The notes below the pieces were generated by a model. The model made no database searches. It saw only the letters and a list, made by a program, of their open reading frames with translations, and had not been told where the DNA came from. From Octopus bimaculoides (lineage: Eukaryota), in contig NC_068982.1 of assembly GCF_001194135.2 (NCBI RefSeq), positions 51,746,378 through 51,810,069 of the forward strand: 63,692 nucleotides of DNA, written 5' to 3'. Each line of letters begins with the position of its first letter. The stretch's first letter is position 1. A program made the position numbers and the translations under genes. This document shows, in pieces, positions 6,514 through 62,773 of this stretch.

Positions 6514-8067
6514 ATGCAGCATCTTTTCTTTCACAACTACAAAGAGGAGAAAGGATCATTCACATACAGCCTGAACAAAGCAGATCTAAATCAAGCCATC
6601 ACTTTACATCCTATCAAGGAACCAACACATCAATTCCGCGTTCATAATTACATTTTAGGACAACGCATATCGAGCTTACGCCAAAAGACCCTGAATCTAC
6701 ACCGGGAGATAAATTCAGTAAATCAGTTGATAGGGGAACAAGACTCTGAGAAACCAAACAATCTCGGTTTAAGGACTTCTATAACAAAATATCATCCAAA
6801 AGATGAGGATGATGTTTTTGAGTGGGATTTTTTTACTCGTCCCTTGTATTCAGCTGCTGACGTTAATCCTAAGCGAGGAATGCCTGCTCATATGCGTGTA
6901 GCACTTGATGACATTATACAGCAGACCATACACATGATCAATGGCAATGCCAGACAGCGTGGCCGTCATATTGATTTTAAAGAAATTCTTTATGGTTACC
7001 GGAGATTAAATCCATATTTAAGCTGTGACTATATTCTTGACCTGCTTTTAATATACAGGAAACACAAAGGACGTCGAATGACTGTCCCTGTTCGAAGACA
7101 TGCATACTTACAGCAGAATTTTGGCCCTATGGAAATTTTGGAAGACTATTTTCCATCAAATAAGGAAGAATACATTTCATACGATTCTGTTCATCCTTTT
7201 GCACATCTCTTTACAGACTATAAATCTCCAGAACGGACTAACGTTGATAAAGCCAAAGAAACTATACATATCGTTCTATCGTTATCTGGTCGGTATGAAA
7301 CCTTTAAAAGATTTATGAAAAACTATGAACAAATTGTTCTAATTCCAAAAGAAAAAGTTCACTTAAATATTGTTCTTTTTGACAGCACAGATGATACAGC
7401 CTTACAGAAATCCATAAATTTGATTGTCCAGTATCAACAACTCTATGGTGCTAATTCAGTTGAACTTATTGAAGCTAATGGAGCATTTTCTCGGGCTAAG
7501 GCTTTGAAATTAGGCTCATCTGATACAAAACCTAATTCTCTACTATTTTTTATGGATGTCGATATTCTCCTTAGTAGGGATGTTTTTCAACGTGTTCGTA
7601 TGAACACCAGACAGGGACTTCAAGTATATTTTCCAATTGTGTTCAGTCAGTTTGATACAAGAAGTTTTTGCCCTGATCCAGTTAATTGCAAATTTGATAT
7701 TAGAGATTTCCGTAATGACTATGGGAATTGGCGACAGTTTGGTTTTGGAATTGCAAGTATATATAAAAGTGATCTTGAAGCTGTTGGTGGTTTTGATACG
7801 AGTATTCAAGGATGGGGCAAAGAGGATGTTGATCTTTACCAAAAATTTATCAATAGTAACTTAACTATTTTTCGCACTGTTGACCCTGGGTTGTATCATG
7901 CATTCCATCATGTTTCTTGTGATCCTGCCTTGGAACCAGCGCAGTATCAAATGTGTCTTGGTTCTCGTGCTTCTGGTTACCAGTCTGTTCATGAATTAGC
8001 AAAACAATTTTATAGCCAGCCCCATCTTTTAAATAGCAGACCAATGGATAGTAATCATAACTCCTGA
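6514..8067 (+). CDS. CHSY1: Chondroitin sulfate synthase 1-like, terminal coding exon (partial gene; upstream exons not seen)
   Basis: 517-codon ORF directly after a polypyrimidine tract and CAG acceptor (6511-6513). Motifs AITLHP, IDFKEILYGYRR, MTVPVRRHAYLQQ, FMDVDI (DxD), VYFPIVFSQF, GWGKEDVD and QYQMCLGS match the C-terminal part of vertebrate CHSY1 as I recall it. The opening Met is probably internal; the human last exon also starts MQQLF (from memory). Ends TGA, followed by TAA. Confidence 0.95.
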   Translation: MQHLFFHNYKEEKGSFTYSLNKADLNQAITLHPIKEPTHQFRVHNYILGQRISSLRQKTLNLHREINSVNQLIGEQDSEKPNNLGLRTSITKYHPKDEDDVFEWDFFTRPLYSAADVNPKRGMPAHMRVALDDIIQQTIHMINGNARQRGRHIDFKEILYGYRRLNPYLSCDYILDLLLIYRKHKGRRMTVPVRRHAYLQQNFGPMEILEDYFPSNKEEYISYDSVHPFAHLFTDYKSPERTNVDKAKETIHIVLSLSGRYETFKRFMKNYEQIVLIPKEKVHLNIVLFDSTDDTALQKSINLIVQYQQLYGANSVELIEANGAFSRAKALKLGSSDTKPNSLLFFMDVDILLSRDVFQRVRMNTRQGLQVYFPIVFSQFDTRSFCPDPVNCKFDIRDFRNDYGNWRQFGFGIASIYKSDLEAVGGFDTSIQGWGKEDVDLYQKFINSNLTIFRTVDPGLYHAFHHVSCDPALEPAQYQMCLGSRASGYQSVHELAKQFYSQPHLLNSRPMDSNHNS

Positions 8068-15569: not shown

Positions 15570-16262
15570 TATTCTTTTATTTTTTCTTTTACTTGTTTCA
15601 GTTATTTGACTGCGGCCATGCTGGAGCACTGCCTTTAGTCAAACAAATCAACCCCAGGACTTATTCTTTGTAAGCCTAGTATTTATTTTATCGGTTTCTT
15701 TTGCTAAGTTACAGGAATATAAACACACCAACATTGGTGTCAAGCAGGGGGGGGGGACAAACACAGACACTCAAATATATATATATANNNNNNNNNNNNN
15801 NNNNNNNNNNNNNNNNNNNNNNNNNNNNNNNNNNNNNNNNNNNNNNNNNNNNNNNNNNNNNNNNNNNNNNNNNNNNNNNNNNNNNNNNNNNNNNNNNNNN
15901 NNNNNNNNNNNNNNNNNNNNNNNNNNNNNNNNNNNNNNNNNNNNNNNNNNNNNNNNNNNNNNNNNNNNNNNNNNNNNNNNNNNNNNNNNNNNNNNNNNNN
16001 NNNNNNNNNNNNNNNNNNNNNNNNNNNNNNNNNNNNNNNNNNNNNNNNNNNNNNNNNNNNNNNNNNNNNNNNNNNNNGAAGAAACTTGCCCAAGGTACCA
16101 CTCCTGCATGGCTGTGTGGTAAGAAGCTTGCTTCCCAACCACATGGTTCCAGGTTCAGTCTTACTATGTGGCACCTTGGGCAAGTGCCTTCTACTATAGC
16201 CTCAAGCCAACCAAAGCCTTGTGAGTGGATTAGGTAGACAGAAACTGAAAGAAGCTCATCGG

Positions 16263-16293
<31 letters not shown>

Positions 16294-43900: not shown

Positions 43901-46900
43901 ATGTTTTTCTCTTACTTCCAATGCTCACTTTTCTAAAATTGAACATAAATTTTAACTGCAATGTGAAATTGACCCAATAAAGTATGTAATGGATTAAACT
44001 GAAGTTTCTTTAAAATAAAATAAATGCTATCAGACTGACTTACATAAATTTTCTTTGGATTTTTGCTTGTCTTCTGCATTCTCAGTATTTTCTGTAGCTT
44101 TTGCAGCTAACCTTTCTGCCCTCTTTTGTAAAGCAATTCTTCTTTTCTCTTGCAAATCAGCTTCAGTCAAAGGCCTGAAAAATATACAGAAAATGTCAGA
44201 GTCAACATATTCAAACTGTACCAGTAAATATATTGTAGGAGTAAAAAAATTAGAAAAAAAACAAACGGTGGGGCGGCTCATTTTTTTTTCCTCACAATTA
44301 AAAATAGGCAGATATTGCCACTATCACTGACATTTAGTGTATTTTCACATATTTGTATGTGGGACTTAATGGGGAGAAAAGGTAGAAGTGTTACTTTATT
44401 CCAAAGAATTAAGGAGGAATTGCAGAACTAGTAAGTAACCAAATTGATATTCTTATGATCCCTTACATTTCATACCCTCTTGAGTTGATAAAATAAGCTA
44501 TCAGTAATGTACCAGAGAAGATACAAATGACTACAATCCTTTGTAACAAATAAGTGAGCTTGTGCCAAAGTAACTTTATTCTAAATGCTTTTCTATAAGT
44601 CTTAGATTATCTCATGTAGGTTTATTCTAAATGGTTTTCTATTCATGTATTGTAATTCTCCTCAGCTCATGTTACGGATATGCTCCAAATATTACAAGCA
44701 TTTTCATTTACAGAACATTTAATATAGTGAAATTGACACAAATATTTTCAGATTCCAAAAACATAAGTACCTTGCTTTATGCTGAGGAAGTGATTTTCTT
44801 TCAATTGCTACCATCTTTGAAACAAATATAATTACAGGAGCATCTTCTGATGAACTGCAAGCCAGAAAATCTAATAAATATGGAACAGAGTAAAATACTT
44901 AAGAAAATATTACAAACACAAAGAGACAAGAGTTAACTCATACAGAAAAAGAAGAAAAAAAAATGACAACAGTGCACTCTCACAATGGATCCAATAAGAA
45001 ACAATATTATTTTGTTAAGGAATAATTATTCTTCTATTCTAATGTGTTGTTTCAGAACTTGTTCTGTGCTTGCCAATTAACAAGGAAATGCCAGTGAAAC
45101 CATCATCATCATTTAACATCTGCTTTCCATGCTGTCAAAGGTTGAACAGTTTGACAGGAACTGGCAAGCTGAAGAGCTGCCCGTGTCTGTTTTGGCATGG
45201 TTTCCATGGCTGGATGCCCTTCCTAACACCAACCACTTTAGAGTGTACTGGGTGCTTTTACACAGCCCTGGCATGGCTGCATTTTATGTGGCACCAGCAC
45301 CCATGAGCCCTCAAAAGCAATCAACCATCAAAAGTATGGTTTTACTTGAAATAAATTCAAGAAGCCCACATTGCAAGAGCCAAAGCAATATCTGAACCAC
45401 ACAGTCGTTTTTCGAGAAAAATTTCAATACCTTTTATTCGTTTCCCATTTTATATCAGATTTTGACCAATGTTACTGAAGTGTGTATTTTCTATCACTCT
45501 AAGTTCCATTACTTTTATAATAAAGTTGTTATAGCTCAGAGGAAGAACAGAAGAATTTCAATATCTTCAAAGAAGATGAATTTTGAAAGACCTCTAGACT
45601 ATTCATAATGTTTGTAAGGCACTACATAATACCAAAACCAAAAGCTTTGGCACCATCTAGTGCCTTGAACAACTAAAGATAATTGTGATGATTTATTCAA
45701 TGGCAGAGCTAAAAGTCTCTCTGCTTATGCCATGAATGGATGACAAACTCGACTGTACAGAATATATGGGTAATTAATAAAAGAAAGACACCAAGTAGAC
45801 AATTTCCTGACAAGGCAGGTGAGAATAACAGAAGAGTTAAGTAACATTCCATGATTCCTTATTTAGAAAAAGAACAATTAAATGAAACAAGAAAGAATGA
45901 TGATAAAATCTCATACCATTTCTTAAATCTTGGCTCTTCTGTGGAAGTGATTCAAAACTACGCGAGTTGCTGGACATGAGTTTCTCAATGCGAGCTTTTG
46001 ACATATTTGTTGGAGCAGGGATTTTCTTGGCTACAATTGCTACAAAAAGAAAATATAAACATCAACACATTAAAAAAAGGTTCCATGTTAAAAATATATT
46101 TCATTTTTGGTTTGTTTGTTTTTGTACATGCTATTTCTCAAAGCAATATTTATAGACTTTATATGAGATAGAGAAAGTCTGTTCTGTTGCATGGTAAGAC
46201 TACTAAAGTAAAAGTATAACAAATAATGTTTGAAGTCATACAAAAAGAAATTTTTAATGTAGTAATAATAGCTATGATGATAATCTTATTAACTAGTGTC
46301 TACTAAATTATGGAGCTGCAGAGAGAATTGTATAGCAATTAACAGTATACAAAACTAGTTCAGGCACTTGAATTTACATAAATTAGTAAAATTTAGGAGA
46401 AATTATCAATTGACAATGTGCTGCTGCCTCGTTAAAAGTACTGGTACAAGTATCACATCAAAAAATAACCAGTACATTCTGTGGAGTGGTTGGAGCTAGG
46501 AAGGGCATCCAGCTGTAGAACCCATGCCAAAACAAACAACAGAGTCTAGTGTAGCCCCTGGCCTTGCCAGCTCTGGTCAAACCATCCAACCAGCATGGAA
46601 AACAGATATTAAACAATGATGATGATGATGATAAAAAGTAATCTATCACAAGAAATAAGAAGCTAGCATCAAATATATCTTTCCTTTTCATTACAGTAGC
46701 AATATTCTGTTGCAATATAAGATGTTATTTCATTTTGGAACCAAGTATCAAGAAAATAGAATGGCATCTTGCAACATAGTAATTGTCTGTCTGGTTAATG
46801 TATCATTTGTTATATATCTAAATGATGATGCATGTTGAACCGATTGGACCTTTACATTTCCATCCCTGTTAATACTATTGTTACTACAAAACTTGCACTA

Positions 46901-49900
46901 AGAGTAAGGTCAAAGTAAAATTACTACCAGCTTTTATAGCAAGTTGATGCAGGTAGTTTATCCTGTCACTCTCCAACTTTTAGTTCATGCAATTGAAAAA
47001 ATGGCATTATTTATGGGACGACTCAATATTTATAAAATGATAATCTTGTTATTCTGTTTATATAAAGCAACTTTAGAAGTACAGTAATTTATAGAAATTT
47101 CATTTTGAAATCTATTTATTTTTTGTTATTTTGCTGTCTGAATCCAAGAAGGCAAAACCCATAACACTGAAATAGTTACAGGAGCAACATATAACAGATT
47201 CAAAAAGAGGTAAAGAATAAAGTGATTAAGAGCTTACAAAGAACTGCATTTGAAAGAGGGAGCCATTGACTGCAAATAGCTTGTAAATGAACTTTAGGAT
47301 CAGACCGAGAGTCTCTTGCAGAAATTTTCAGATTTAATGAATTTACAATCTTTGCAATCATTTCTTTGTCTCTGAAGAGAAAAAATAGATAGAATATACT
47401 TCATTATTTAATTGAATGCCTGAAGATAAAAAAAAAANNNNNNNNNNNNNNNNNNNNNNNNNNNNNNNNNNNNNNNNNNNNNNNNNNNNNNNNNNNNNNN
47501 NNNNNNNNNNNNNNNNNNNNNNNNNNNNNNNNNNNNNNNNNNNNNNNNNNNNNNNNNNNNNNNNNNNNNNNATTCTTGTATCATATAGCTCAATGATAAT
47601 AATGGTAGACGAAACTTAGAAAATGTGTTAAACTTCAAGAAAGAAGACACTTGAATATGAAAATCTTTTCTCTTTTAGGAATATGGAATTTTATTTAAGA
47701 AACACTTAAACATTTGTACATTATTTTGTTCATGCTAACAGCTGCATAAAAAGCACCAAGTACACACTGTAAGGTGGTTGGCATAAGGAAGGCCATCCAG
47801 CCATAGAAACCATGCTAAAGCAGATATTAGAGCCTGTTCCAGTTTTTTGGTTTGCCAGCTCCTGTCAAACCATCCAACCCTTGCCAGCATGGAAAATAGA
47901 TGTTAAATGATGATGAGTTACGCATCTCTGAAAATTTGCACAAAGTGTGAATTAGTGCAGGATATTTTATCTAATATTGATTTCAAATTCTGGCACAAGG
48001 CCAACAATTTTGGGAAAGAAGTAAATCAATTACATTGACTCCAGTGTTGAACTGGTACTTATTTTTACGACCCCCTAAAGGATGAAATGCAAAGTTGACA
48101 TCAGTGGAATTTGAACTCAGAAAGTAAAGATAAACGAAAGCATTTTGCCTGGTATGCTAACAATTCTGCCAGCTTGCCTATGTTACTTTATCTAATATTA
48201 ATTACAATGAAGTGAATACGATATATACATACTTCAATATAATGACATATAAGTAGAATATAAAAATTAAAAGCAGGAGTGGCTGTGTGGTAAGTAGCTT
48301 GCTTACCAACCACATGGTTCCGGGTTCAGTCCCACTGCGTGGCACTTTGGGCAAGTGTCTTCTACTATAGCCTCGGGCCAACCAAAGCCTTCTGAGTGGA
48401 TTTGGTAGACGGAAACTGAAAGAAGACCGTCGTATATATATATGTATGTGTGTGTGTTTATGTGTCTGCGTTTGTTCCCCCAACATCGCTTGACAACCGA
48501 TACTGGTGAGTTTACATCCCCGTAACTTAGCGGTTCGGCAAAAGAGACCGATAGAATAAGTACTACTAGGCTTACAAAGAATAAGTCCTGGAGTCGATTT
48601 GCTCAACTAAAGGCGGTGCTCCAGCATGGCCACAGTCACATGACTGAAACAAGTAAAAGAGAGAGCAATAGCAAACTGTTAACTAAACCACATTCATTAG
48701 CACGAGTTGATAATATTACCCTCCACCCAAGCTGCTCTAAACATATCACTTGTGAAAGTTCACTGAAACACTTTCATTGTCAGAGTAATTGTAAATGCTT
48801 CACTAAGCATGAAAAATATTATGCGATTTATTAACAGGTAAAACTTACTTTTTAATCATTACAGCTTGATACACAGCCCAGATGTTGTCGAGGACAAACT
48901 GAACAAATAAGGGTTTTTTATTTTTAGCCTGAAGAAAAAAAAAACGCATTTTTATAAATTTTTACCAAACCAACAACTCTTTCATATAGAATCATATATA
49001 AAAAGAAAAAAAAAAGCCAAAATAGGAATCTATGATATTAAAACTTTGCTTAAGATATCAAAGCAACTAACGTTCACCTTTGTCCTTCACACTAACCTCT
49101 TGTTTTCGATCGAGATTTTATCCCAATTACCACATACATACACTCATAACATCAATTCCCATTCTCCTCCAACTACATGAGCGGATGCTGAAAAGTTCCT
49201 GGCATCGGATAAAAGAAAATACAGGAGAATCAGTTAATTATGATTTTTTATACGACATAGTCCTGTCTCAGATTCACACACTTTATCGCAGCAGTCCTTC
49301 AGGTTTTCTAAGTCTTGTAAAAGAACTCAGAAGATTGGGCCTTCAAGCAGGTCTTTCACAATACCCTTAAAGCCAGGAATTTTTCAGCACCCCTTCATAA
49401 ATATTAATAGTTAACAAATATGCACTATATCTTCTAGTGTTAAAAACATATTGTTTTGAATTAATAATACATTATCTCATAGCTTCAAGATTTAGATGTG
49501 ATTGTATGTTTTTAGAATGACATAGCAGGATAGGTGAGAGAGACTGGATCTGGCCAGTTGGAACATAAAACAAGGTAGATTATTTGGACCAGATACAGCC
49601 AGTTTAAATGCTGAACAACAATCACTTTCCATTGTTCTCATTCAATAAGCATCCCAAGTAGACATTGAAATCCCACCATTCCAATTTTGGATAAAAATAC
49701 TTATAAGAATAAAAAAGGATAGAAGGAATGAATAAAAAGAAAACACTCACTTGTGCGCCTTTCATTATTCTTTTGGCTTTTGAATTAAGATAATAGTTTC
49801 CCCACAGTGTCTTGTTTAGAGCTGCAGCACTGATACCTAGCTTCTCTGAATACATATTAACAAAGTGACTGATGCTAGAGAAAAGAGACAAAAAAATAAT

Positions 49901-52900
49901 CATAATAAATTTAACAGCCATACATATTTATATGCAGATACTTCGTATTGGGTTGTTGAATTAGCTATCAAGAAATAAAAATTAACTAATATTCTTTGGG
50001 AATGTTACTAACACGGAGTAAAATATGAAATTTAATAATAAAAAATATTTTGATGTCTTTTTTCAATGAGAGAGATAGTAAGAAACTCTAAGGAGAGCTG
50101 AACAGCAGAATTCTTCAGAGAAGAAGTCCCCCACCCTCATGCAAGTGTTTCAGCCTTTAACACTTTAAAGGGACTGGGCTGCATCCAGATCATGGCTCCT
50201 GGAAACCACTCAGCTGCAACCTTCTGTGCCACAGTCTGCATTGCAACCGTACTAGGTGGTTAAAGTACCCCACAAACAAGGTACCTTGGGTGTTGTAACG
50301 AGTTCAGTCAAAGACACAAGTTGAGTGTAGGGTAAATCATACTTTTTGAAATTCTATGAGTGAATGTTGAGAAAACTTACCTGAAACCCCAGCCATCCAA
50401 GGCACTAGCAAATATCACATTGCCTTGGTCTGGGGAAAAGTAGATGTTGGAGTCATCACCTTCCTCCTCTAATACCATGTTCAAGTCAGCTGACCAACTC
50501 TATAATGTATATAATGTATTCAAAAATAAAAAGAGAAATATGCGACAACCAAGTAGTTTTTGCAGTCAAATGAAAATTGCCATTGCTGCAGCTAACATTG
50601 TTTTAAATCAGCTTAAGGATAAAATGCTCAATTTAATTTCTTCCATCTCTTTATGTTCTGAGTTCAAATCCCACCGAGGTTAACATTGCCTTTCATCCTT
50701 ATGGGGTTGATAAAATTAAATACCAGAGAAGTACTAAGGTCAGTGATATTGACTACCGCCGCCCCTACAATTCTACCTCTGTGCCAAAAATTGAAACCAT
50801 TATTTTACATCTACTTTTTATGCTGGTTTAGGTTGGATAGGTCATCACAATCCAAGTAAATTCATATTTGGAGTCACTAACCTCTTAAATGGGTCAGAGG
50901 ACCTCATGTCATTTGTACAATATCATTTTTGGTTTAGTTTCAACCCCATTCTTAGAGGCACTACTTTACTGAAGCATTGGGTACATTTTATCATTGTACC
51001 AGCACTAAAGAGGTTGCCATGTTCTCAGCAACACTAAAAGGGTCCACTTGGCTAAGTTATCTCAGCTTGTTCACTAACCACTTTACAGAGTAGTTAGATC
51101 AATGGTTAGAAACCATTAAAATTAGTATTACCTTGATACAATTTTAGGCCTTTCATCTGTAAAACTTAGATTTCTAAAAATAATACAAGCTGTTACACTG
51201 TAGTAGAATGTTGACTAAATGTTTTGTGGTGTCTAATACCTCCTCTTACACCAAGTTCAAATCCTGCTAAGACTGATTTATTTTCCCTCCACCTGAATCT
51301 CTATTTAATTAAGTATTAATAATAAATTGAGTTGACTATAGCACTCACATAGATTTCATACCATTATTGGTTCCAGTCACTGGACTGTGACCATGCTGGC
51401 AATGCTTGATTGCATCAGACTCAGTACTAATCTTATCAGCCATGGAAGGATAAAAGGTAAATAGGTCTAGGTGGAATTTCAACTCAGAAAGTAAAAACAT
51501 AATCATGCACTTCAAGGTATTTTATCCAACACTTACTTTTTCTGCCAACTAACCATCATATATCCTTTACTTTTAGTTTATGTATTTCTTTGGCTTCATT
51601 TAAATATTTGAAATACTTTCCCCCTTATTTGCAGATATACTTCAACCCTACACCTAAAAATGGAAAATTTTGAAAGTATTATATTTACCTCCAAGTCTTC
51701 ACTTGCATTAGGTGGCATCTACAAAATTTTAAAATATGGTAGAAGTTATTTTCTCTTTCTTGTTTTCAGAAAATTTCCCTAACTTTTATTTAAAGCCAAT
51801 CCATTAAAAAAAAAGTTAATATTTATGACATTATTGGGAAGCTGTGAGACGTCTAGATCAAGCCAGTTTGTAAAACAGTTTGGGCTAGATATGGCTGGTT
51901 TAAATGCTAAAGGGTTAAATAAAAGGAGTCCTTAGTAGTGAAAAGATTGGAAACCAACGAATTACAGTTATTCTGTTCAAGAAAAACAGATCAATACTCT
52001 GTAATTAATTTAGTTATTGAAGCTTCATTAATAATTTCAGCTCTGTGTAAGCCAAACATATAGAATTTGAACAGCATTACAAGTTAAAGAAATTCACATT
52101 TACTAATACTAAAAGCACATGCTGTTGATGATTAACCCTAATTAGCTACAATTAGGTAGATTAATCTGGGATTCACACTCAACATGCAGCATATACTCTA
52201 ATCTGCAATTGGAGTGTGTCATGGATACTTATAGATATTTTACCTGCAGTAATAACAGAAGGCTATGTTATATTGCAGGGGGATGGTAACATTTGCATAA
52301 TGATTTCATTAAAGCATCAATGGCTGATATCTAGTAACCAATTTAGAAAATTTCAGAGGTATACTTGCCAAGCAAGTTATTTGATCTGAGATCGTGAGTC
52401 AAAACTATTTTGAAAACATTTTCTAAAATATTCAAACAAATGATATTTCATATAAGTATATATCAAAAAATAAACTGAACTAATATAAATATATTGAAGA
52501 CAATCTTAAATGCTAATTTCAAAATTAAAACACATTCTTAAAGTTTATAAAAATTACTTGCATTGGAACTTTTCTCCATCCATTCAGAAGTAAACAATTC
52601 ACTGGTTAAAACATTGATCTAGATAAAAAAAATAATAAGTTTCTTTAGAAGCAAAACCAAGAACAGAAATTTTCTAAATTGTTAATTGTATTCCCATAAA
52701 TAATTTTTGGATATTTTCAATTCCAAACAGTAATTACGCCTGTAGAGTGAATAACCGTCATGTCCCGTACGTGTCTTGTAGAATTTCCCTGGGGAACCGT
52801 TTGATGCAAAGAAAAACGATTGGGTTATTTCCCTTGGCTACGAAAATGAACGGGTTATTCCCCTTGGTTGTTAAAGGAATATATATATATATATATATAT

Positions 52901-55900
52901 GTTGTTGTACTTGGGGATGGTCATATTGCCAGTTTAGCCAATAAAAACACACACACTGTATATTTGGTGTTAAATTGCTTCAGCTTTATATTACATTAAT
53001 CTTAATCTTATTTCGGCCAGAGTTCTTTCATCACACTTCTGTGACCTCATCAGTGGTCCTTTGTTTCCTTCTTTCTTATGTGTGTCTCACCTTGCTAACT
53101 ATCAGCCATTTTGTATATATATATATANNNNNNNNNNNNNNNNNNNNNNNNNNNNNNNNNNNNNNNNNNNNNNNNNNNNNNNNAGACTTTTATTAAACTT
53201 CAATGAGTCTAGTAACAAACTGGATATTACTTCAACATGTTTGCAAAGTTTCACGAAAATTCGTTAACGGGCGTAGGCGGCAACTTGACACAAACAGACA
53301 ACTTGCATTTATATATGTATAGATATGATGGGCTTCTTTCAGTTTCTGTCTACCAAATCCACTCACAAGGCTTTGGACAGACCAGAGCAGAAGACACTTG
53401 CCTAAGGTAACCCACAGTAGGACTGAACCCAGAACTACGTGGTTGAGATACAAGCATCTTACCACACCACCACACCTGCACCTATTTGAAACATTTCAGA
53501 TATGAATTCTATCAGGAGTTAGAGCAGTTATTAAAAGCGGAGAAACTTACCTGTTCCAGAATTTGCCGAAGATGTAAATATGCCTCTTGAGGTTCCATGT
53601 GGAGTTCAAGTATCAGTCGATCAATTTTATTGAGCAACAACACTGGTTTAATACCTTCCAGCCAGGCTTGCCGTAACACAGCATGAGTCTAAAGAAGTAA
53701 ATTAGAGCAACAACACAATGAGTAACAATTTCATAATGAAAAGTAGCAAAGACAATATTCTAACTTGTTCAGAGCTTCATTTATATAACTTCTGAAACTA
53801 ATTTAAATAAAACTAACTAAATGTAGTTTTTTTCAGCTTTAACCCTTTAGCATTCAGATAATTGTCAAATGTAATGCATATTTATTCACATTGTTTTAAA
53901 TTAATCATGCATTATCTCATTGATTTGAGATTTTGATGACAGTTTTTTTTTATTTTTAGAACATTGTAGGGTTAGTGTGAGAGGTCAGATCTGACAAGTT
54001 TGAACAAAAATAGAATATTTGGATTGGATATGGCAAGTTTAAATGCTATGGAGTTTATAGTTACTGTTAAAGCAAGAATGAGAGATATATACATAGACTG
54101 AACATCATCCAAAGTACAGTTATTGCTTGTAAAAAATCATAACCTTAGATAGCAAAGATTAAATTTATATTTAGAATATCATTCCTTCTATTTATCCACT
54201 CTACAACCATACCATGTTATATTGGTTTCAAATTTTGGTGCCAGACCAGCAAATTTAGAAGAGGGGACAAGTTGATTACATCAACCCCAGTGTCCTATAG
54301 TTACATATATTACTGATCCCAAAAGGATGGAAGGCAAATTTGACCTCAGCATGTACAGTCTGAAGAAATGCTGTTAGGCATTTTGTCCAACATGCAAACA
54401 ATTCTGCCAGCTCACCACCTTTAACTTCTATGTAATAAAGTTTCCTTACAAAATCTATCAACTGTTTAAACCATTTGAATATTACTCATGATTTTATTTA
54501 CTTTATATAGCAATTAGTGTAAAGAGCTTGTTGGTTACAGATCTTCAAGAAATCAACCACAAATTCTCTGGATTTCTAATAGTGAGAGTGATAAGGAACT
54601 ATTTGTTAACTTGATGCAGAACAAATATCTCAAAGGGCTTCATTTGTAAAGCACCAGCTTTTCAGTTTCTCACTGATTTGTATATTCTTCACTGGTATAC
54701 ATGACCAAAAGATATATATGAGCTTCAGCACAGAATTCCACTCAGAAATTATTAATCAACACAAATACATGGTAGAAATGGAGATGTGCCCAAAGTAACA
54801 TGCAGCAGGTTTGAGCGTGAAATTACTTGGTTGCAAAGAAAACATCTTAACCAAACAGCCAAGCCTGCACCTGTAAATTTTATAAAGCAGAAAACCACAG
54901 AAATGTTTCAATATTTTTGAAATAGAAAGAAAAATGAAAAGATACTGACCTGTGGGCTGACTCCTTCAATGACATCAACAATAATAATAGCACCATCACA
55001 AAGACGTACAGCTGTCGACACTTCACTAGAAAAGTCAACATGTCCAGGAGAGTCAATTAGATTTATCAAATAATCCTCTTGTTCTGAAATAAAAGAGAAC
55101 CCATTTAGTGACTTAATTAAAATGAAAACTTTGTCAAGATAAAGAAAAATGATTATCAAATACTTGTGGACAAATCGTCTCCACAATGCCTGGCTCTCCA
55201 TCGGTTATGATAACAAGTGTTCTAGTTGATATAATCAACCGAACAGCCAGCTCATGAAATTAATGTGCAAGTGGCTGAGCATTCCAGACACACACACACA
55301 CACACACCTTTTCAGAGAATTCAGCATGATAAGGCTGGCCCTTTGAATTACAGATACAACTCATTTTTGCCAGTTGAGTAACTGGAGCAACAAGAATTCA
55401 CAACTTTACTATTGTGAGCCAAGCCTCCACAAGGAGAAAAAATGTGACGAACATAGAATGGTGGTCAATGTGCTTAGACTGAATGCAAGGAAGGTTAAAT
55501 GAAAAATCATAACTTGGATAAAGAAGATGTGGAAGCCAAAAGGTATTTTGTTCAATAAATATTCCTTGAGGATGATGATGAAAGGAAAACTATGGCAGAG
55601 GAAAACTAGTTTGATCTCTTTTCAGTTTGTTACACTACGACCACAGCCTGTATGCACACCAGTATTTTCCATTGGATATGTTACTGTAAGAGGTTGTTAA
55701 AAGCAGAATATAAACTAGATTGGAAGAACCTTGCCCTAACAGAACCAAATAGTGGGGTAACAGTAGAAGTGTTGGGGCAAGTCGATTACATCCACCCTAG
55801 TGTTTCTCTGGCACTCATTTTATTAAACCCTGAAAGGATGAAAGGCAAAGTCAATCTCAATGGAATTTGAAGTTAGTAAAAATATTAATGAGGAAACTAA

Positions 55901-57742: not shown

Positions 57743-60700
57743 CACACACACAAAAATATTATATTGCATGGCTATTGGGTTTTTCCTTCATATTCAAATC
57801 TAACAAAGCTTAAAAGAAATGTTTTTAATACATATTTGTGTATGTATGTGTGTGCACACGCACAGAAGTCAAACTTACAATAAAAAAGAAATAATACTAA
57901 GAGCCCATTTTAGAGCTCTAACACATAGGTATATATATAACTATTTAATTATCCAGATACAATCATCTCTCTTCTTACAACACAATATAGATTTTGACTA
58001 AACTATATTATAATGTATATCTGAAACAGACATAACAACTACGGTCAAACATCCAGTTAGAGAGCAGTCTCTCAATATGAATAATAATCAACACTTATAT
58101 TCAATGTCCATTGTGCTGTAGGACAATTAGGTTATGGACATTAAGACCTTTTAGCCTAACTTTTTTTTTTGTATGGTTGAAATCAGTGTTCTTTAAAGGC
58201 ACGTGTTTGGTGTTCATCTCTGTAAGTATACTGAAGAACTTATGAAAGCATATGGATGGGTTCTTGGTCTTATTTTTCAGTGTTGTTTCATAGCACATAT
58301 GGACGAGGACAGCTGCATTAAGAAGAGCCGATCGCTAACTGTGGAGGGCACCTGTGGAAGAGGTAGACCCAGGAAGATGAGGGACAAGATGATGAGGTAT
58401 GATCTTTGGATGTTGAGTCTCACAGAGGTGATGACAAGTGATTTGCTGTACTTAAGACATGTCAAGCTAAGTGAAATCATAGTCGTGGCCAGTGCTGGTG
58501 ACATGTAAAAGGCACCCAGTACATTCTGTAGAGTGAGTGTTTGGCATTAGGAAGGGCATCCAGCCATAAGAACCAAGCCAAAACAGACTAGAGCAGCTCT
58601 GCAGCTTACCATCCTCAGTCAAATAGTCTTACCCATGCTAGCATGGAAAATGGATGCTAAATGATGATGTCTTGGCTCATAGAAGGCTAGATCACTTCCT
58701 TTTCCTCCCAACAAATTATCATCATCATCATCAACCCTTGGACATTACTATTTCAAGTCCCAGGATTAATAGGATGGGTAGGCCTGATTTCCATGGTATA
58801 TAAGTGACTGAGATCACAACATTCCCCCTGAATGGTAAGCTAGTTTGTCGCAGAGTTACTCATTTACAGCTTAGTGGACTGGAGCAATGTGAAGTTAAGT
58901 GTCTTGCTCAAAAACATGATGCATCACCCAGTCAGTGAATCGAAAACACAATCGTGTGATCATGAGTGCGACTGCCTAACCACATAGCCATGTGCCTTCA
59001 CAAATAATCAGCCATGCCTAATTTTTTCCCCATCACAGATTAATTTCATGCTGCTCCTCCAGTTTTACTTTCAGAAGGCAGCTGGTCTTGCCCTTATATT
59101 CACTGCCATGACTGCATAAGATGGAATACACACAGTTGTTGATCATGTTTTCTTCTGATGGTAAAAATGTTTAGGAAAATTGTCCCTGAGGATAAACTGC
59201 TTTTGAATATTGTTTCAAGGAACATCATCATCGTTATTTAAAGTCTGCTTTCCATGCTGGCATAGGTTGGATGGCTTGACAAACTGGTATGGCCAAGGGC
59301 TGCACCAGGTTCCATATTTTGTTTTGACTTGGTTTCTAGGGCTGGATGCCTTTCCTAATGCCAACCACTCCACAGAGGGTACTGGATGCTTTTTATGTGG
59401 TACCATCACCAGTGCTTTTTAAGTGGCATGAGCACCCACACCAATGCTTTGGGGGGGGGGGGGGGAGAAAAACAATAAGGCATAGCTGATCATTTATGGA
59501 GGGAAAAGGAAAGTTGCCAACTCATGTGAAACAAAGTCAAAATAATAGATAAGTAACAACATTCAGAGATAAAATGGCTCAAAGAGATAGATTGTGAACT
59601 AGGCTTTGATAAGTTCTTCAGGAGGGCTAGCATAGAAATGAACACCATATTGGTATCTTTAATGAAAAGAGGAAGAACATTAAACGTTTGACTATAAAAA
59701 GTAAAAAGGAGTTAGGTTTAAAGTTCCTAATTTACATCTCATAATTGTTCTGCAGTACATGACATAGTGAATACAATCAATGCTTATATTTACTATCGGT
59801 ATTGACTAAGTGTTAAGTACTTTAGTTTACTCAGTGGATGGATATTCAATTGCTGATGTTCTGTCTTTCTCCCCATACATATACACACACACACACAAAG
59901 ATGCACACATACACATTCATATATATATCATCATCATCATCATCGTTTAACGTCCGCTTTCCATGCTAGCATGGGTTGGACGATTTGACTGAGGACTGGT
60001 GCAACCGGATGGCAACACCAGGCTCCAATCTAATTTGGCAGAGTTTCTACAGCTGGATGCCCTTCCTAACACCAACCACTCAGAGAGTGTAGTGGGTGCT
60101 TTTACGTGTCACCTCCACGAAAACGGCCACGCTCAAAATGGTGTCTTTTATGTGCCACCCGCACAAGAGCCAGTCCAGGGGCACTGGCAGCAATCTCGCT
60201 CGAAAACCCTACAAGGCCAGTCAGGCGGTACTGGCAATGGTCACGCTCAGGATGGTACATCTTATGTGCCACCTGCACAAGAACCAGTCCAGGGGCCCTG
60301 GCAACGATCTCACTTGGCTTGCCGGGTCTTCTCACGCACAGCACATTTTCAAAGGTCTCGGTCAATGCACATCTATGCATACATGCTTTGGTTCAAGTGA
60401 ATTAAGCAAACAATATCTCAAACAGGAAAATATCTAATATAAGAGCATCTGTGGCATGGACAACAATCTAAACCCCATGGATTAAATAAACAGTAAGAAC
60501 ATTATTGAATACAACAGGCATCTAAGTACACCAGACGGCACAACAGCCAGAATATTGTGACTATAACAACTAAGACAATAACACTGTCCAGATATATCAG
60601 TGCATAATACTAAATATTACACACTCAATGACTTTAAACACAGTTCAGTGGCTTTAAGTAATTTATCAGCAATACTTACCATGATCAACATGAGCTAAAA

Positions 60701-60773: not shown

Positions 60774-61845
60774 TCAAGAATTGCAATCTGAAAAAGAAGT
60801 TTTATATTAATAATGTTTATTTCCACAAAAATCAAATAACAGTAGTATTAATGGTATTAGGAAGGGCATCCAGCCATAGAAACCAAGCCAAAACAGACTG
60901 TGAAACCTGATGTGGACCACGGCCTTGCCAGTTTCTGTCAAGCTTTTCAATTCATGCCAGGATGGAAAACAGTTATTAAATGCTGATTTTGGTGATGATG
61001 ATTAAATTGACATGAACAACAAACAAACATTTTTTTTTAGTTGTCTTTAGCTGTATTAGTAAATTTGGATAGGAGACTGTGTTGAGCTTGGTCAATGGGC
61101 CACATTGCTTCTTGGGGAGTAAACTTAATCCATCACCTCTTGGTATTGGTGCCTTTACTAGAATCCATTCTATTGCAAGTCTCCACTTTCTTTCAGTCCC
61201 AGGGGCTCTTCAAAAGGTTCATGGGTGCTGCCCAGAACCAAGAATTTGGTACACAAAATTAAACTCCTATTCCAACTCCTCGATTTGTTTTAACACCAAC
61301 TCCTACTTTTACTCATCAATATATGGCTCAGCTGACTCATTAATCCACACACAGGACATCTTAAGGTTATAACTTTGAGAATAGTGAGGTAGACCAGAAA
61401 AAAGTCATTCTAAGATTGTTTTTTTAACGTAAGCATGCCCAAACAAGGCGAATGCTTACACAGAGCAGGTTTTACAGCCAGCCACATCATCCAAACCAAC
61501 CAGGTGAAACCGGGCTTAGCTGCTAGTATACACACACACACACACACATGTGTGTGTGTGTGTGTGGTAAGTAGCTTGCTTACCAACCACATGGTTCCGG
61601 GTTCAGTCCCACAGCGTCACACCTTGGGCAAGTGTCTTCTACTATAGCTTTGGGCCGACCAAAGCCTTGTGAGTGGATTTGGTAGACGGAAACTGAAAGA
61701 AGCCTGTCGTATATATGTATATATGTTGTGTATCTGTGTCTGTCCCCCCCAACATCGCTTGACAACCGATGCTGGTGTGTTTAGGTTCCCGTAACTTAGC
61801 AGTTCGGCAAAAGAGAACGATAGAATAAGTACTAGNNNNNNNNNN

Positions 61846-62482: not shown

Positions 62483-62773
62483 AAACAATTGCAGCGTGGA
62501 AGGTGTTTATAAGCCATTTAAGAAACACAAAAACCGTTAGATTCACTTCAACATTTAAGTTTAATTTGTCAAAATATTTTCCTCGCTTTGAGACCGCGAC
62601 CTGTCCACTGACAAAATTCCGAGATGCAGCACAGAATTTTGTCAGTGGACAGGTCGCGGTCTCAAAGCGACGAAAATATTTTGACAAATTAAACTTAAAT
62701 GTTGAAGTGAATCTAACGGGTTTTTTTGTGTTTCTTAAATGGCTTATAAACACCTTCCACGCTGCAATTGTTT
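62483..62773. mobile_element. 291-bp near-perfect palindrome carrying hammerhead-like motifs (possible inverted Penelope-like terminal repeat or foldback element)
   Basis: Arms of about 137 bp (62483-62619 and 62634-62773), 14-nt spacer, few mismatches. The right arm holds a hammerhead-like fold at 62638-62688. Confidence 0.75.

What the first reader, a model, noticed from the sequence alone, without database searches (positions are those of the whole stretch)
53015..53059. Intronic minimal hammerhead ribozyme, sense to the EFL1 pre-mRNA
Seen: the minus strand reads stem I (GGACCA), CUGAUGA, one extra G, stem II GUCACA/UGUGAU with a GAAG loop, GAAA, a 2-bp stem III (A-U, G-C) with a 2-nt loop, a CUC site, then UGGCC. 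It sits in a (TA)n-flanked insert between coding exons 5 and 6, upstream of the GC-donor exon. Established: minimal type I hammerheads with very short stem III occur in Penelope-like element termini and newt satellite 2 and usually cleave as dimers; single-base insertions after A9 are known. Inference: this is a Penelope-like-derived ribozyme that could cut EFL1 pre-mRNA co-transcriptionally. The G10.1-U11.1 wobble and one stem I mismatch may have weakened it.
Basis: partly seen in the sequence, partly recalled or inferred. Interest (0 to 1): 0.75.

Follow-up and report, generated by a model that had tools for sequence, protein, structure and literature searches.

The report
Degenerate retrotransposon-type hammerhead motif in intron
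A 45-base hammerhead-ribozyme-like motif does sit in an intron of the EFL1 gene, but it is most likely a decayed, inactive leftover of a Penelope-like retrotransposon (or a chance look-alike), which is common in invertebrate genomes.

Summary
The motif is in the sequence exactly as described: minus strand 53059-53015, in intron 5 of an EFL1/Ria1 gene, sense to the transcript. It is rarer than chance within this window. A descriptor loose enough to accept it finds only this site. The same descriptor gives about 0.003 hits per window in shuffles and 0.009 with scrambled-core decoys.

Its apparent oddities are published hallmarks of the minimal hammerheads of Penelope-like elements (PLEs): an extra base after A9, a 6-bp helix II and a short helix I. 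The segment is flanked by (TA)n, a reported PLE insertion target.

Two conserved family features fail. The 10.1-11.1 pair is G·U, not G-C, and loop 3 (AA) is not palindromic. No Rfam hammerhead model matches, the window holds no second copy or dimer partner, and the window has no RT ORF of 110 aa or more. No suitable eukaryotic genome was available, so related copies and covariation could not be tested.

Best reading (about 0.6): a solo, slightly decayed PLE-type hammerhead relic that does nothing to EFL1. A chance motif is about 0.3. Active cleavage of EFL1 pre-mRNA is about 0.04. This is an ordinary finding of low interest.

The parts
53054..53059 (-). Helix I, 5' strand (GGACCA)
   Evidence: Pairs with 53019-53015 at 4 of 5 positions (4 of 6 if extended); A.C mismatch at 53057.
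53047..53053 (-). Core box CUGAUGA (C3-A9)
   Evidence: exact match to the consensus CUGANGA.
53046..53046 (-). Unpaired G between A9 and 10.1
   Evidence: This bulge is described as conserved in PLE min-HHRs (PMC4209133).
53030..53045 (-). Helix II (GUCACA/UGUGAU, 6 bp) with GAAG loop; the 10.1-11.1 pair is G.U (U11.1 = 53030)
   Evidence: U11.1-G12 is a TpG, where the canonical C11.1-G12 would be a CpG. Window CpG o/e is 0.27.
53026..53029 (-). Core box GAAA (G12 A13 A14 A15.1)
53021..53026 (-). Vestigial helix III: A15.1-U16.1 and G15.2-C16.2 around a non-palindromic AA loop
   Evidence: A 2-nt hairpin loop is infeasible in the energy model, and no intermolecular helix III is predicted in a homodimer.
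53020..53020 (-). C17; predicted cleavage would fall between 53020 and 53019
   Evidence: Position derived; cleavage itself was not tested.
53015..53019 (-). Helix I, 3' strand (UGGCC)
52901..53113 (-). 213-bp segment carrying the motif; single copy in the window; candidate truncated PLE or PLE-derived fragment
   Evidence: No non-(TA)n similarity elsewhere in the window. CpG o/e is 0.14.
52879..52900 (.). (TA)11 microsatellite bounding the segment on its RNA-3' side
53114..53127 (.). (TA)7 microsatellite bounding the segment on its RNA-5' side; it abuts the N gap at 53128-53183
   Evidence: These two are the only (TA)>=6 runs between 35.4 kb and 57.3 kb.
52619..53550 (-). EFL1 intron 5 (GTAAGT donor at 53550, AG acceptor at 52620-52619), which hosts the motif

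Best explanation
The motif is most likely a relic of a Penelope-like-element (PLE) type minimal type I hammerhead. In this reading, a short 5'-truncated PLE terminus, or a PLE-derived non-autonomous 'retrozyme' monomer, inserted into a (TA)n microsatellite in EFL1 intron 5, in the sense orientation.

In the parent element such hammerheads are thought to process tandem transcripts. Two copies pair through their palindromic helix III regions to form an active dimer.

This copy is alone and has decayed:
- C11.1 has probably become U through CpG deamination.
- Loop 3 is no longer palindromic.
- Helix I carries a mismatch.

It is therefore predicted to be catalytically inert and to be removed with the intron without affecting EFL1.

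Shown: the motif, its location, its rarity within the window and the absence of a partner. Inferred: the PLE origin, the CpG-decay history and the inactivity.
For: - All core bases are intact, and the descriptor hits only this site. Expected chance hits per window are 0.003 (shuffles) to 0.009 (decoy cores), or 0.002 when a 6-bp helix II plus the bulge is required.
- Several features match the published PLE min-HHR description: an unpaired base after A9, a 6-bp helix II, a 4-5 bp helix I with no defined loop 1, and a complementary 15.2-16.2 pair (PMC4209133).
- Most PLE min-HHRs occur as solo motifs, thousands per genome. In Xenopus about 43% of retrozyme copies lie in introns (bioRxiv 10.64898/2026.07.22.740005).
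- PLEs insert preferentially into microsatellites, including (TA)n, and carry the HHR near their 3' end (PMC8557442). The 213-bp segment lies between the only two (TA)n runs in 22 kb.
- CpG o/e is 0.27 in the window and 0.14 in the segment, with TpG/CpA in excess. U11.1-G12 sits exactly where canonical C11.1-G12 would be a CpG.
Against: - No related copy was found in any searchable resource. None of those resources holds this animal's genome.
- The window has no RT/GIY-YIG ORF of 110 aa or more, and the segment is too short to carry one.
- Two conserved family features fail: G10.1-C11.1 and a palindromic loop 3.
- No Rfam hammerhead hit.
- (TA)n runs are common in this genome (24 in the window) and are often associated with SINE ends, so the flanks are weak evidence.
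- The descriptor was fitted after the fact.
Confidence: 0.6

Rival explanations
1. Chance look-alike: ordinary AT-rich intronic sequence happens to carry CUGAUGA and GAAA 17 nt apart around a small hairpin. It has no transposon ancestry and no activity.
For: - Decoy-core descriptors hit the real window at 0.009 per descriptor. Extrapolated to a genome of a few Gb (an assumed size), this implies hundreds of such matches.
- The fold energy is not unusual (z = -1.29).
- Helix I is only 3 contiguous bp plus 1, there is a G.U at 10.1-11.1, and loop 3 is not palindromic.
- No Rfam hit and no related copies anywhere.
Against: - The per-window expectation is only 0.002-0.009. PLE-bearing genomes are reported to carry thousands of real min-HHRs, so real copies should outnumber chance ones.
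- The (TA)n flanks fit a PLE insertion.
Confidence: 0.3
2. Active intronic ribozyme: the motif self-cleaves EFL1 pre-mRNA, alone or with a partner, and so modulates EFL1 expression, as proposed for the conserved intronic hammerheads of amniotes.
For: - It is in the sense orientation within an intron, and all invariant core bases are intact.
- Domesticated intronic type I hammerheads exist in RECK, CTCL and DTNB (PMC6155905).
- The N gap at 53128-53183 could hide more sequence.
Against: - Single PLE min-HHRs gave no detectable cleavage in vitro, and dimers cleaved only weakly.
- No second motif exists in the window on either strand, even with one core mismatch allowed.
- Helix III cannot form in the monomer and is not predicted in a homodimer.
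- G.U replaces the conserved G10.1-C11.1.
- There are no loop 1/loop 2 tertiary-contact elements.
- The motif does not match the Rfam Hammerhead_1, HH9 or HH10 models.
- Conservation could not be shown.
Confidence: 0.04
3. Intronic box C/D snoRNA: GUGAUGA (53031-53025) would be the C box and CUGA, about 47 nt downstream, the D box, with the RNA processed from the EFL1 intron.
For: Weak Rfam matches to C/D-box families cover minus 52978-53036: sR18 at 15.6 bits (E=0.64) and TtnuCD9 at 19.5 bits (E=5.9). The sense intronic location is typical of snoRNAs.
Against: - The scores are far below gathering thresholds (45 and 70 bits), and the families are archaeal and ciliate models without structure.
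- No terminal stem flanks the boxes.
- No convincing C'/D' boxes are present.
- At about 60 nt it is short for a metazoan snoRNA (read).
Confidence: 0.02

Closest known systems
Minimal hammerheads (min-HHRs) of metazoan Penelope-like elements (Cervera & de la Pena 2014, PMC4209133; Lunse, Weinberg & Breaker, RNA Biol, known here only through citations)
   Same: Type I topology, intact CUGANGA and GAAA boxes, an unpaired base between A9 and 10.1, a 6-bp helix II, a 4-5 bp helix I without a defined loop 1, a vestigial helix III with a G-C pair at 15.2-16.2, occurrence as a solo copy, and (TA)n flanks.
   Different: G.U instead of the highly conserved G10.1-C11.1. The 2-nt loop 3 (AA) is not palindromic, so the dimer helix III would have two A.A mismatches. 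No pLTR, RT or EN context is visible, and no family of copies could be shown.
Drosophila virilis Penelope hammerhead variant
   Same: 6-bp helix II with a bulged base at its 5' end, a helix III with a 2-nt insertion, and a short helix I.
   Different: In D. virilis the 2-nt insertion is palindromic, and the motif is highly conserved in about 130 copies inside pLTRs. Neither is shown here.
Newt satellite 2 / metazoan non-LTR retrozyme type I hammerheads (Rfam Hammerhead_1)
   Same: Type I topology, a 1-2 bp helix III with a 2-4 nt loop, and activity expected only as a dimer.
   Different: The canonical forms have a 6-bp helix I and a 4-bp helix II with conserved interacting loops, and they occur in tandem repeats. 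Here helix II is 6 bp, no loop 1 is defined, there is no tandem array, and no Rfam hit appears at E<=10.
Conserved intronic hammerheads of amniotes (HH9 in RECK, HH10 in CTCL; also DTNB)
   Same: A sense-strand type I hammerhead inside an intron of a protein-coding gene, thought to descend from retroelement hammerheads.
   Different: Those are canonical, active and ultraconserved. This one is non-canonical, has no Rfam HH9 or HH10 match, and its conservation is untested.

Membership tests
Hammerhead ribozyme (any type) | Invariant core: C3 U4 G5 A6 N7 G8 A9, G12 A13 A14, A15.1-U16.1, H17 | tested here: met
   CUGAUGA ... GAAA ... U C, with every core position canonical.
Hammerhead ribozyme (any type) | Three helices around the core | tested here: inconclusive
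   Helix II is solid at 6 bp. Helix I pairs at 4 of 5 positions with an internal A.C. Helix III is 2 bp around a 2-nt loop, which is infeasible in the monomer.
Hammerhead ribozyme (any type) | Self-cleavage after H17 | not testable with these tools
   Needs in vitro transcription and cleavage assays, or RNA-end mapping.
Rfam hammerhead families (Hammerhead_1, _3, _II, HH9, HH10) | Covariance-model score at or above gathering | tested here: not met
   No hit at gathering in the whole window. No hammerhead hit at E<=10 on 701 nt or on 86 nt. These models describe canonical forms, so failure does not exclude a min-HHR.
PLE min-HHR | Unpaired nucleotide between A9 and 10.1 | tested here: met
   G at 53046; the feature is listed in PMC4209133.
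PLE min-HHR | Long helix II (6-8 bp) and short helix I (4-5 bp) | tested here: met
   Helix II is 6 bp; helix I is 4 of 5.
PLE min-HHR | Highly conserved G10.1-C11.1 pair | tested here: not met
   The pair is G10.1.U11.1 (53045/53030). Decay of a C11.1-G12 CpG would explain it (CpG o/e 0.27), but that is inference.
PLE min-HHR | Palindromic 15.2-16.2, and palindromic loop 3 when present, allowing a dimeric helix III | tested here: not met
   15.2-16.2 is G-C, which is acceptable. Loop 3 is AA, so AGAACU is not self-complementary, and no intermolecular helix III appears in the cofold.
PLE min-HHR | Belongs to a genomic consensus family with covariation in the helices | not testable with these tools
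   No eukaryotic genome collection was available. Window self-search, pattern scans and translated searches all found nothing.
PLE min-HHR | Lies in a PLE pLTR / 3' end next to an RT plus GIY-YIG ORF (at least for some family members) | tested here: inconclusive
   The window has no RT ORF of 110 aa or more, and the 213-bp segment is too short to carry one. Most published motifs are solo. The (TA)n flanks fit the PLE target preference.
Non-LTR retrozyme | Tandem repeats of about 150-400 bp, each with a type I HHR | tested here: not met
   A single motif with no tandem array. It could only be a monomer derivative.
Box C/D snoRNA | C and D boxes brought together by a terminal stem, plus a family-model match | tested here: not met
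   Box-like strings are present, but there is no terminal stem, and the Rfam scores of 15.6-19.5 bits fall far short of the 45-70 bit gathering thresholds.

The most novel reading that the evidence does not exclude
A retrotransposon-derived minimal hammerhead has been co-opted in an invertebrate housekeeping gene. It would cleave EFL1 pre-mRNA in intron 5, perhaps with a partner hidden in the assembly gap or with protein help, and so tune the level of a ribosome-maturation GTPase. That would make it an invertebrate counterpart of the amniote RECK and CTCL intronic hammerheads.
Probability: 0.03. Interest if true: 0.75.

Novelty: new member of a known kind. Interest (0 to 1): 0.15.

Why it matters
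If the relic reading is right, the practical value is annotation. Intron 5 of EFL1 would carry a PLE-derived fragment, and the motif should not be annotated as an active ribozyme. It would also be one small example of how CpG decay disables the G10.1-C11.1 pair of hammerheads in methylated gene bodies.

Only the unlikely active reading would matter biologically. It would extend domesticated intronic hammerheads from amniotes to invertebrates and link RNA self-cleavage to ribosome-biogenesis control.

Tried and rejected
- **Rfam cmscan.** I ran it at gathering on the whole window, and at E<=10 on 701 nt and on 86 nt. No hammerhead family matched. Only sub-threshold C/D-box and junk matches appeared, and the snoRNA idea was rejected for lack of a terminal stem.
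- **Second copy or dimer partner.** A strict descriptor, a relaxed one allowing one core mismatch, blastn self-search and repeat finders found none.
- **Related copies elsewhere.** Two degenerate DNA patterns were scanned against metagenome, viral and prokaryotic genome collections, with 0 hits. The plus-strand ORF across the motif was used as a translated probe and gave 0 candidates. A full phmmer scan gave one low-complexity tandem-repeat protein, judged a chance match. A literature full-text search for the helix II/core strings gave 0 hits.
- **Finding the source genome or an orthologous intron.** Exact-protein look-ups of two window ORFs were not on record. The best EFL1 homologues are only 56-59% identical. 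Their contigs (L001, L002) do not reach the upstream exons, share no SINE with the window, and contain no hammerhead motif.
- **Schistosoma Sm-alpha-like SINE with a hammerhead.** The neighbouring SINE (53288-53485) has at least 16 copies in the window, and none continues into the motif-bearing segment, so this idea was rejected.
- **Inverted repeat 52319-52337 / 53092-53110.** At 16 of 19 matches it is at chance level for a 2-kb region, so I did not pursue it as MITE termini.
- **Six-frame Pfam scan of the intron.** The tool rejected translations containing stop codons. I did not repeat it, because the 213-bp segment is too short to hold a domain.
- **Supplements and one key paper.** The supplementary alignments of the two key PLE papers, and the Lunse et al. 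paper, are not held. I therefore could not build a PLE-specific covariance model.
Full report
**Observation**

The minus strand from 53059 to 53015 reads GGACCA-CUGAUGA-G-GUCACA-GAAG-UGUGAU-GAAA-G-AA-C-U-C-UGGCC.

In hammerhead numbering, every invariant core position is canonical:
- C3-A9 lies at 53053-53047.
- G12-A15.1 lies at 53029-53026.
- U16.1 is 53021.
- C17 is 53020, so the predicted scissile bond is 53020/53019.

The helices are less regular:
- Helix II is a clean 6-bp stem with a GAAG loop, but its core-proximal pair is G.U.
- Helix I pairs as A-U, C-G, C-G, A.C, G-C and then stops.
- Helix III is two pairs around a two-base loop. The nearest-neighbour model disallows this hairpin in a monomer.
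- The minimum-free-energy fold recovers helices I and II but is not unusually stable (z = -1.29).

**Context**

The minus strand encodes an EFL1/Ria1 GTPase:
- A 328-aa exon carries the Pfam EFL1 domain (E = 2.1e-21).
- Homologues are named ribosome assembly protein 1, RIA1 and elongation factor-like GTPase 1.

I located the coding exons as follows:

| Exon | Position | Landmark |
|---|---|---|
| 1 | ~60.7 kb | AHVDHGK |
| 2 | ~57.2 kb | [15 protein letters not shown] |
| 3 | ~56.6 kb | [16 protein letters not shown] |
| 4 | ~55.08-54.91 kb | |
| 5 | 53688-53551 | |
| 6 | 52618-52562 | |

Intron 5 runs from the GTAAGT donor at 53550 to the AG acceptor at 52620-52619. The motif is therefore intronic and sense to the transcript, as claimed.

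Exon 6 can be joined in frame to exon 7 (which starts at 50499) only through AAT|GCAAGT.

Read 5' to 3' on the RNA, the intron contains:
- a SINE-like repeat (53485-53288) with at least 16 diverged copies in the window;
- about 100 nt of unique sequence;
- a 56-N assembly gap;
- (TA)7;
- the 213-bp unique segment that carries the motif;
- (TA)11;
- further unique sequence.

**Is it more than chance?**

I wrote a descriptor just loose enough to admit the candidate. It requires:
- CUGANGA, followed by 0-1 inserted base;
- helix II of at least 4 bp, with G.U allowed;
- GAAA;
- 0-3 further helix III pairs;
- U16.1 and H17;
- helix I paired at 4 of 5 positions.

The descriptor finds only this site on either strand. 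The chance estimates are:

| Null model | Result | Expected hits per window |
|---|---|---|
| Dinucleotide shuffles | 1 of 300 gave a hit | about 0.003 |
| Scrambled-core decoy descriptors on the real window | 46 of 5040 gave a hit | 0.009 |
| Decoys, also requiring helix II >= 6 bp and the bulge | 10 of 5040 | 0.002 |

The decoy test keeps the real sequence's hairpin content, so it is the more conservative control.

The motif is unusual for a single window, with p roughly 0.002-0.01. Two caveats apply. The descriptor was fitted after seeing the candidate. Extrapolated to a genome of a few Gb (an assumed size, since the source genome is unknown), the same rate predicts several hundred chance matches.

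**What the literature says about such motifs**

Cervera and de la Pena (PMC4209133) describe the minimal hammerheads of metazoan Penelope-like elements:
- Helix II is longer than usual (6-8 bp).
[quoted passage not shown] They list four conserved traits that their descriptor did not impose:
- consensus families with covariation;
- the extra base between positions 9 and 10.1;
- a highly conserved G10.1-C11.1 pair;
- palindromic 15.2-16.2, and palindromic loop 3 when present.

Most copies are solo and number in the thousands per genome. A single motif gave no detectable cleavage in vitro, and dimers cleaved only weakly.

The features that looked like defects to a reader used to canonical hammerheads are therefore family hallmarks. 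These are the extra G, the long helix II and the short helix I.

Craig et al. (PMC8557442) report that PLEs insert preferentially into microsatellites, including (TA)n, and carry the hammerhead near the 3' end. They also report that PLEs are frequently 5'-truncated and that cephalopods carry PLE families.

In this window, the only two (TA)>=6 runs between 35.4 and 57.3 kb are the ones bracketing the 213-bp segment. A split microsatellite target would look like this. The evidence is weak, however, because (TA)n runs are common in the window (24 in all) and often sit at SINE ends.

**Where the candidate fails the family**

The 10.1-11.1 pair is G.U, and loop 3 is AA. The helix III region AGAACU is therefore not self-complementary. 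RNAcofold predicts no intermolecular helix III for a homodimer.

The G.U has a simple historical explanation. Canonical C11.1 followed by G12 is a CpG. This window shows strong methylation-type CpG decay, with CpG o/e 0.27 and TpG/CpA o/e 1.29. Within the 213-bp segment the values are 0.14 and 1.51. A C-to-T change at that site is thus the single most likely substitution in the motif. This is inference, not observation.

Loop 3 is one transversion away from either palindrome, AGAUCU or AGUACU. Three defects in about 30 non-core positions, with the core intact, fits a copy that has diverged by roughly 10% from an active parent.

**Tests that gave nothing**

- No Rfam hammerhead family matches, at gathering or at E<=10 even on 86 nt. 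Those models describe canonical forms, so this argues against a canonical type I, HH9 or HH10 ribozyme rather than against a min-HHR.
- No second motif exists in the window, even with one core mismatch allowed. The window has no RT ORF of 110 aa or more.
- The 213-bp segment has no other copy in the window.
- None of the searchable collections holds this animal's genome. Pattern scans of metagenomic, viral and prokaryotic contigs gave 0 hits.
- A translated probe across the motif gave nothing meaningful.
- The nearest EFL1 homologues are only 56-59% identical, and their contigs neither reach the orthologous intron nor share repeats with the window.
- The two decisive criteria, family membership with covariation and a pLTR context, therefore remain untested.

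**Mechanism and verdict**

The most likely history has four steps:
- A PLE or PLE-derived non-autonomous element inserted into a (TA)n tract of EFL1 intron 5.
- Only a short 3' piece carrying the hammerhead remains.
- In the parent element, the hammerhead worked as a dimer between tandem copies to process the element's RNA.
- This orphan copy has no partner, cannot build helix III, and has lost the G10.1-C11.1 pair.

It is therefore spliced out with the intron and does nothing. I put this at about 0.6.

A pure chance motif is the main rival, at about 0.3. It cannot be excluded without the genome.

Active cleavage of EFL1 pre-mRNA is about 0.04. The evidence against it is the in vitro behaviour of such motifs, the missing partner and the structural defects. 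Intronic copies of hammerhead-bearing retroelements are also commonplace, at about 43% of retrozyme copies in Xenopus.

A box C/D snoRNA reading rests on sub-threshold Rfam hits. It lacks a terminal stem and rates about 0.02.

**Novelty**

Nothing here is new in kind. At best it is one more degenerate example of a motif class known since 2014. Because two conserved features of that class were tested and not met, I describe it as a probable relic of the class, not an intact member. Interest is low.

Noticed in passing
window 62483-62773: A near-perfect palindrome of about 290 bp. Inner arms 62529-62626 and 62627-62724 are 95% complementary with no spacer, and outer arms 62483-62533 and 62723-62773 are 100% complementary. 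ORFs on both strands give almost the same peptide. It is a foldback element or an assembly artefact.
   Followed up: partly
window 6514-8067 (+): A single uninterrupted 517-aa ORF with a full-length CHGN (chondroitin N-acetylgalactosaminyltransferase) domain, Pfam E = 8.7e-154. It is a large coding exon of a chondroitin synthase-type gene lying beyond the 3' part of EFL1.
   Followed up: partly
window 53288-53485, plus at least 16 other sites (e.g. 16114-16282, 61552-61724, 48273-48447, 1832-1989): An abundant SINE-like repeat of about 170-200 bp at 72-80% identity, in both orientations and often next to (TA)n/(TG)n tracts. ARAGORN finds no intact tRNA in the copy nearest the motif.
   Followed up: partly
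whole window: Strong CpG depletion (o/e 0.27) with TpG/CpA excess (1.29), at 34% GC and with ten N gaps. This looks like a draft assembly of a methylated invertebrate genome. The species could not be identified because the best protein matches are only 56-79% identical.
   Followed up: partly
window 52556-52561 (-): EFL1 exon 6 (52618-52562) appears to use a GC-AG intron, with donor AAT|GCAAGT. A GT four bases downstream would break the frame with exon 7 at 50499.
   Followed up: yes
window 45070-45400, 46458-46715, 58467-58622, 59210-59422, 60807-60950: A second repeat family is visible as recurring ORF peptides (…[12 protein letters not shown]…TT…) on both strands. It is probably another SINE or MITE family.
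   Followed up: no
window 59999-60437 (+): An internal tandem duplication of roughly 120 nt is visible as repeated peptide blocks ([24 protein letters not shown] / [24 protein letters not shown]), lying between EFL1 exons 1 and 2.
   Followed up: no
window 52812-52866 (-): A short imperfect tandem duplication, CCAAGGGGAATAACCCGTTCATTTTCGTAG / CCAAGGGAAATAACCCAATCGTTTTTC, lies just 3' (in RNA sense) of the (TA)11 that bounds the motif-bearing segment. Tandem Repeats Finder did not score it.
   Followed up: no
L001 6574-7813 and L002 6031-8106: The contigs carrying the closest EFL1 exon homologue (ENA ERZ21867824, 33% GC) have reverse-transcriptase (RVT_1) ORFs about 2-4 kb upstream of that exon. 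I did not classify the RT type.
   Followed up: no
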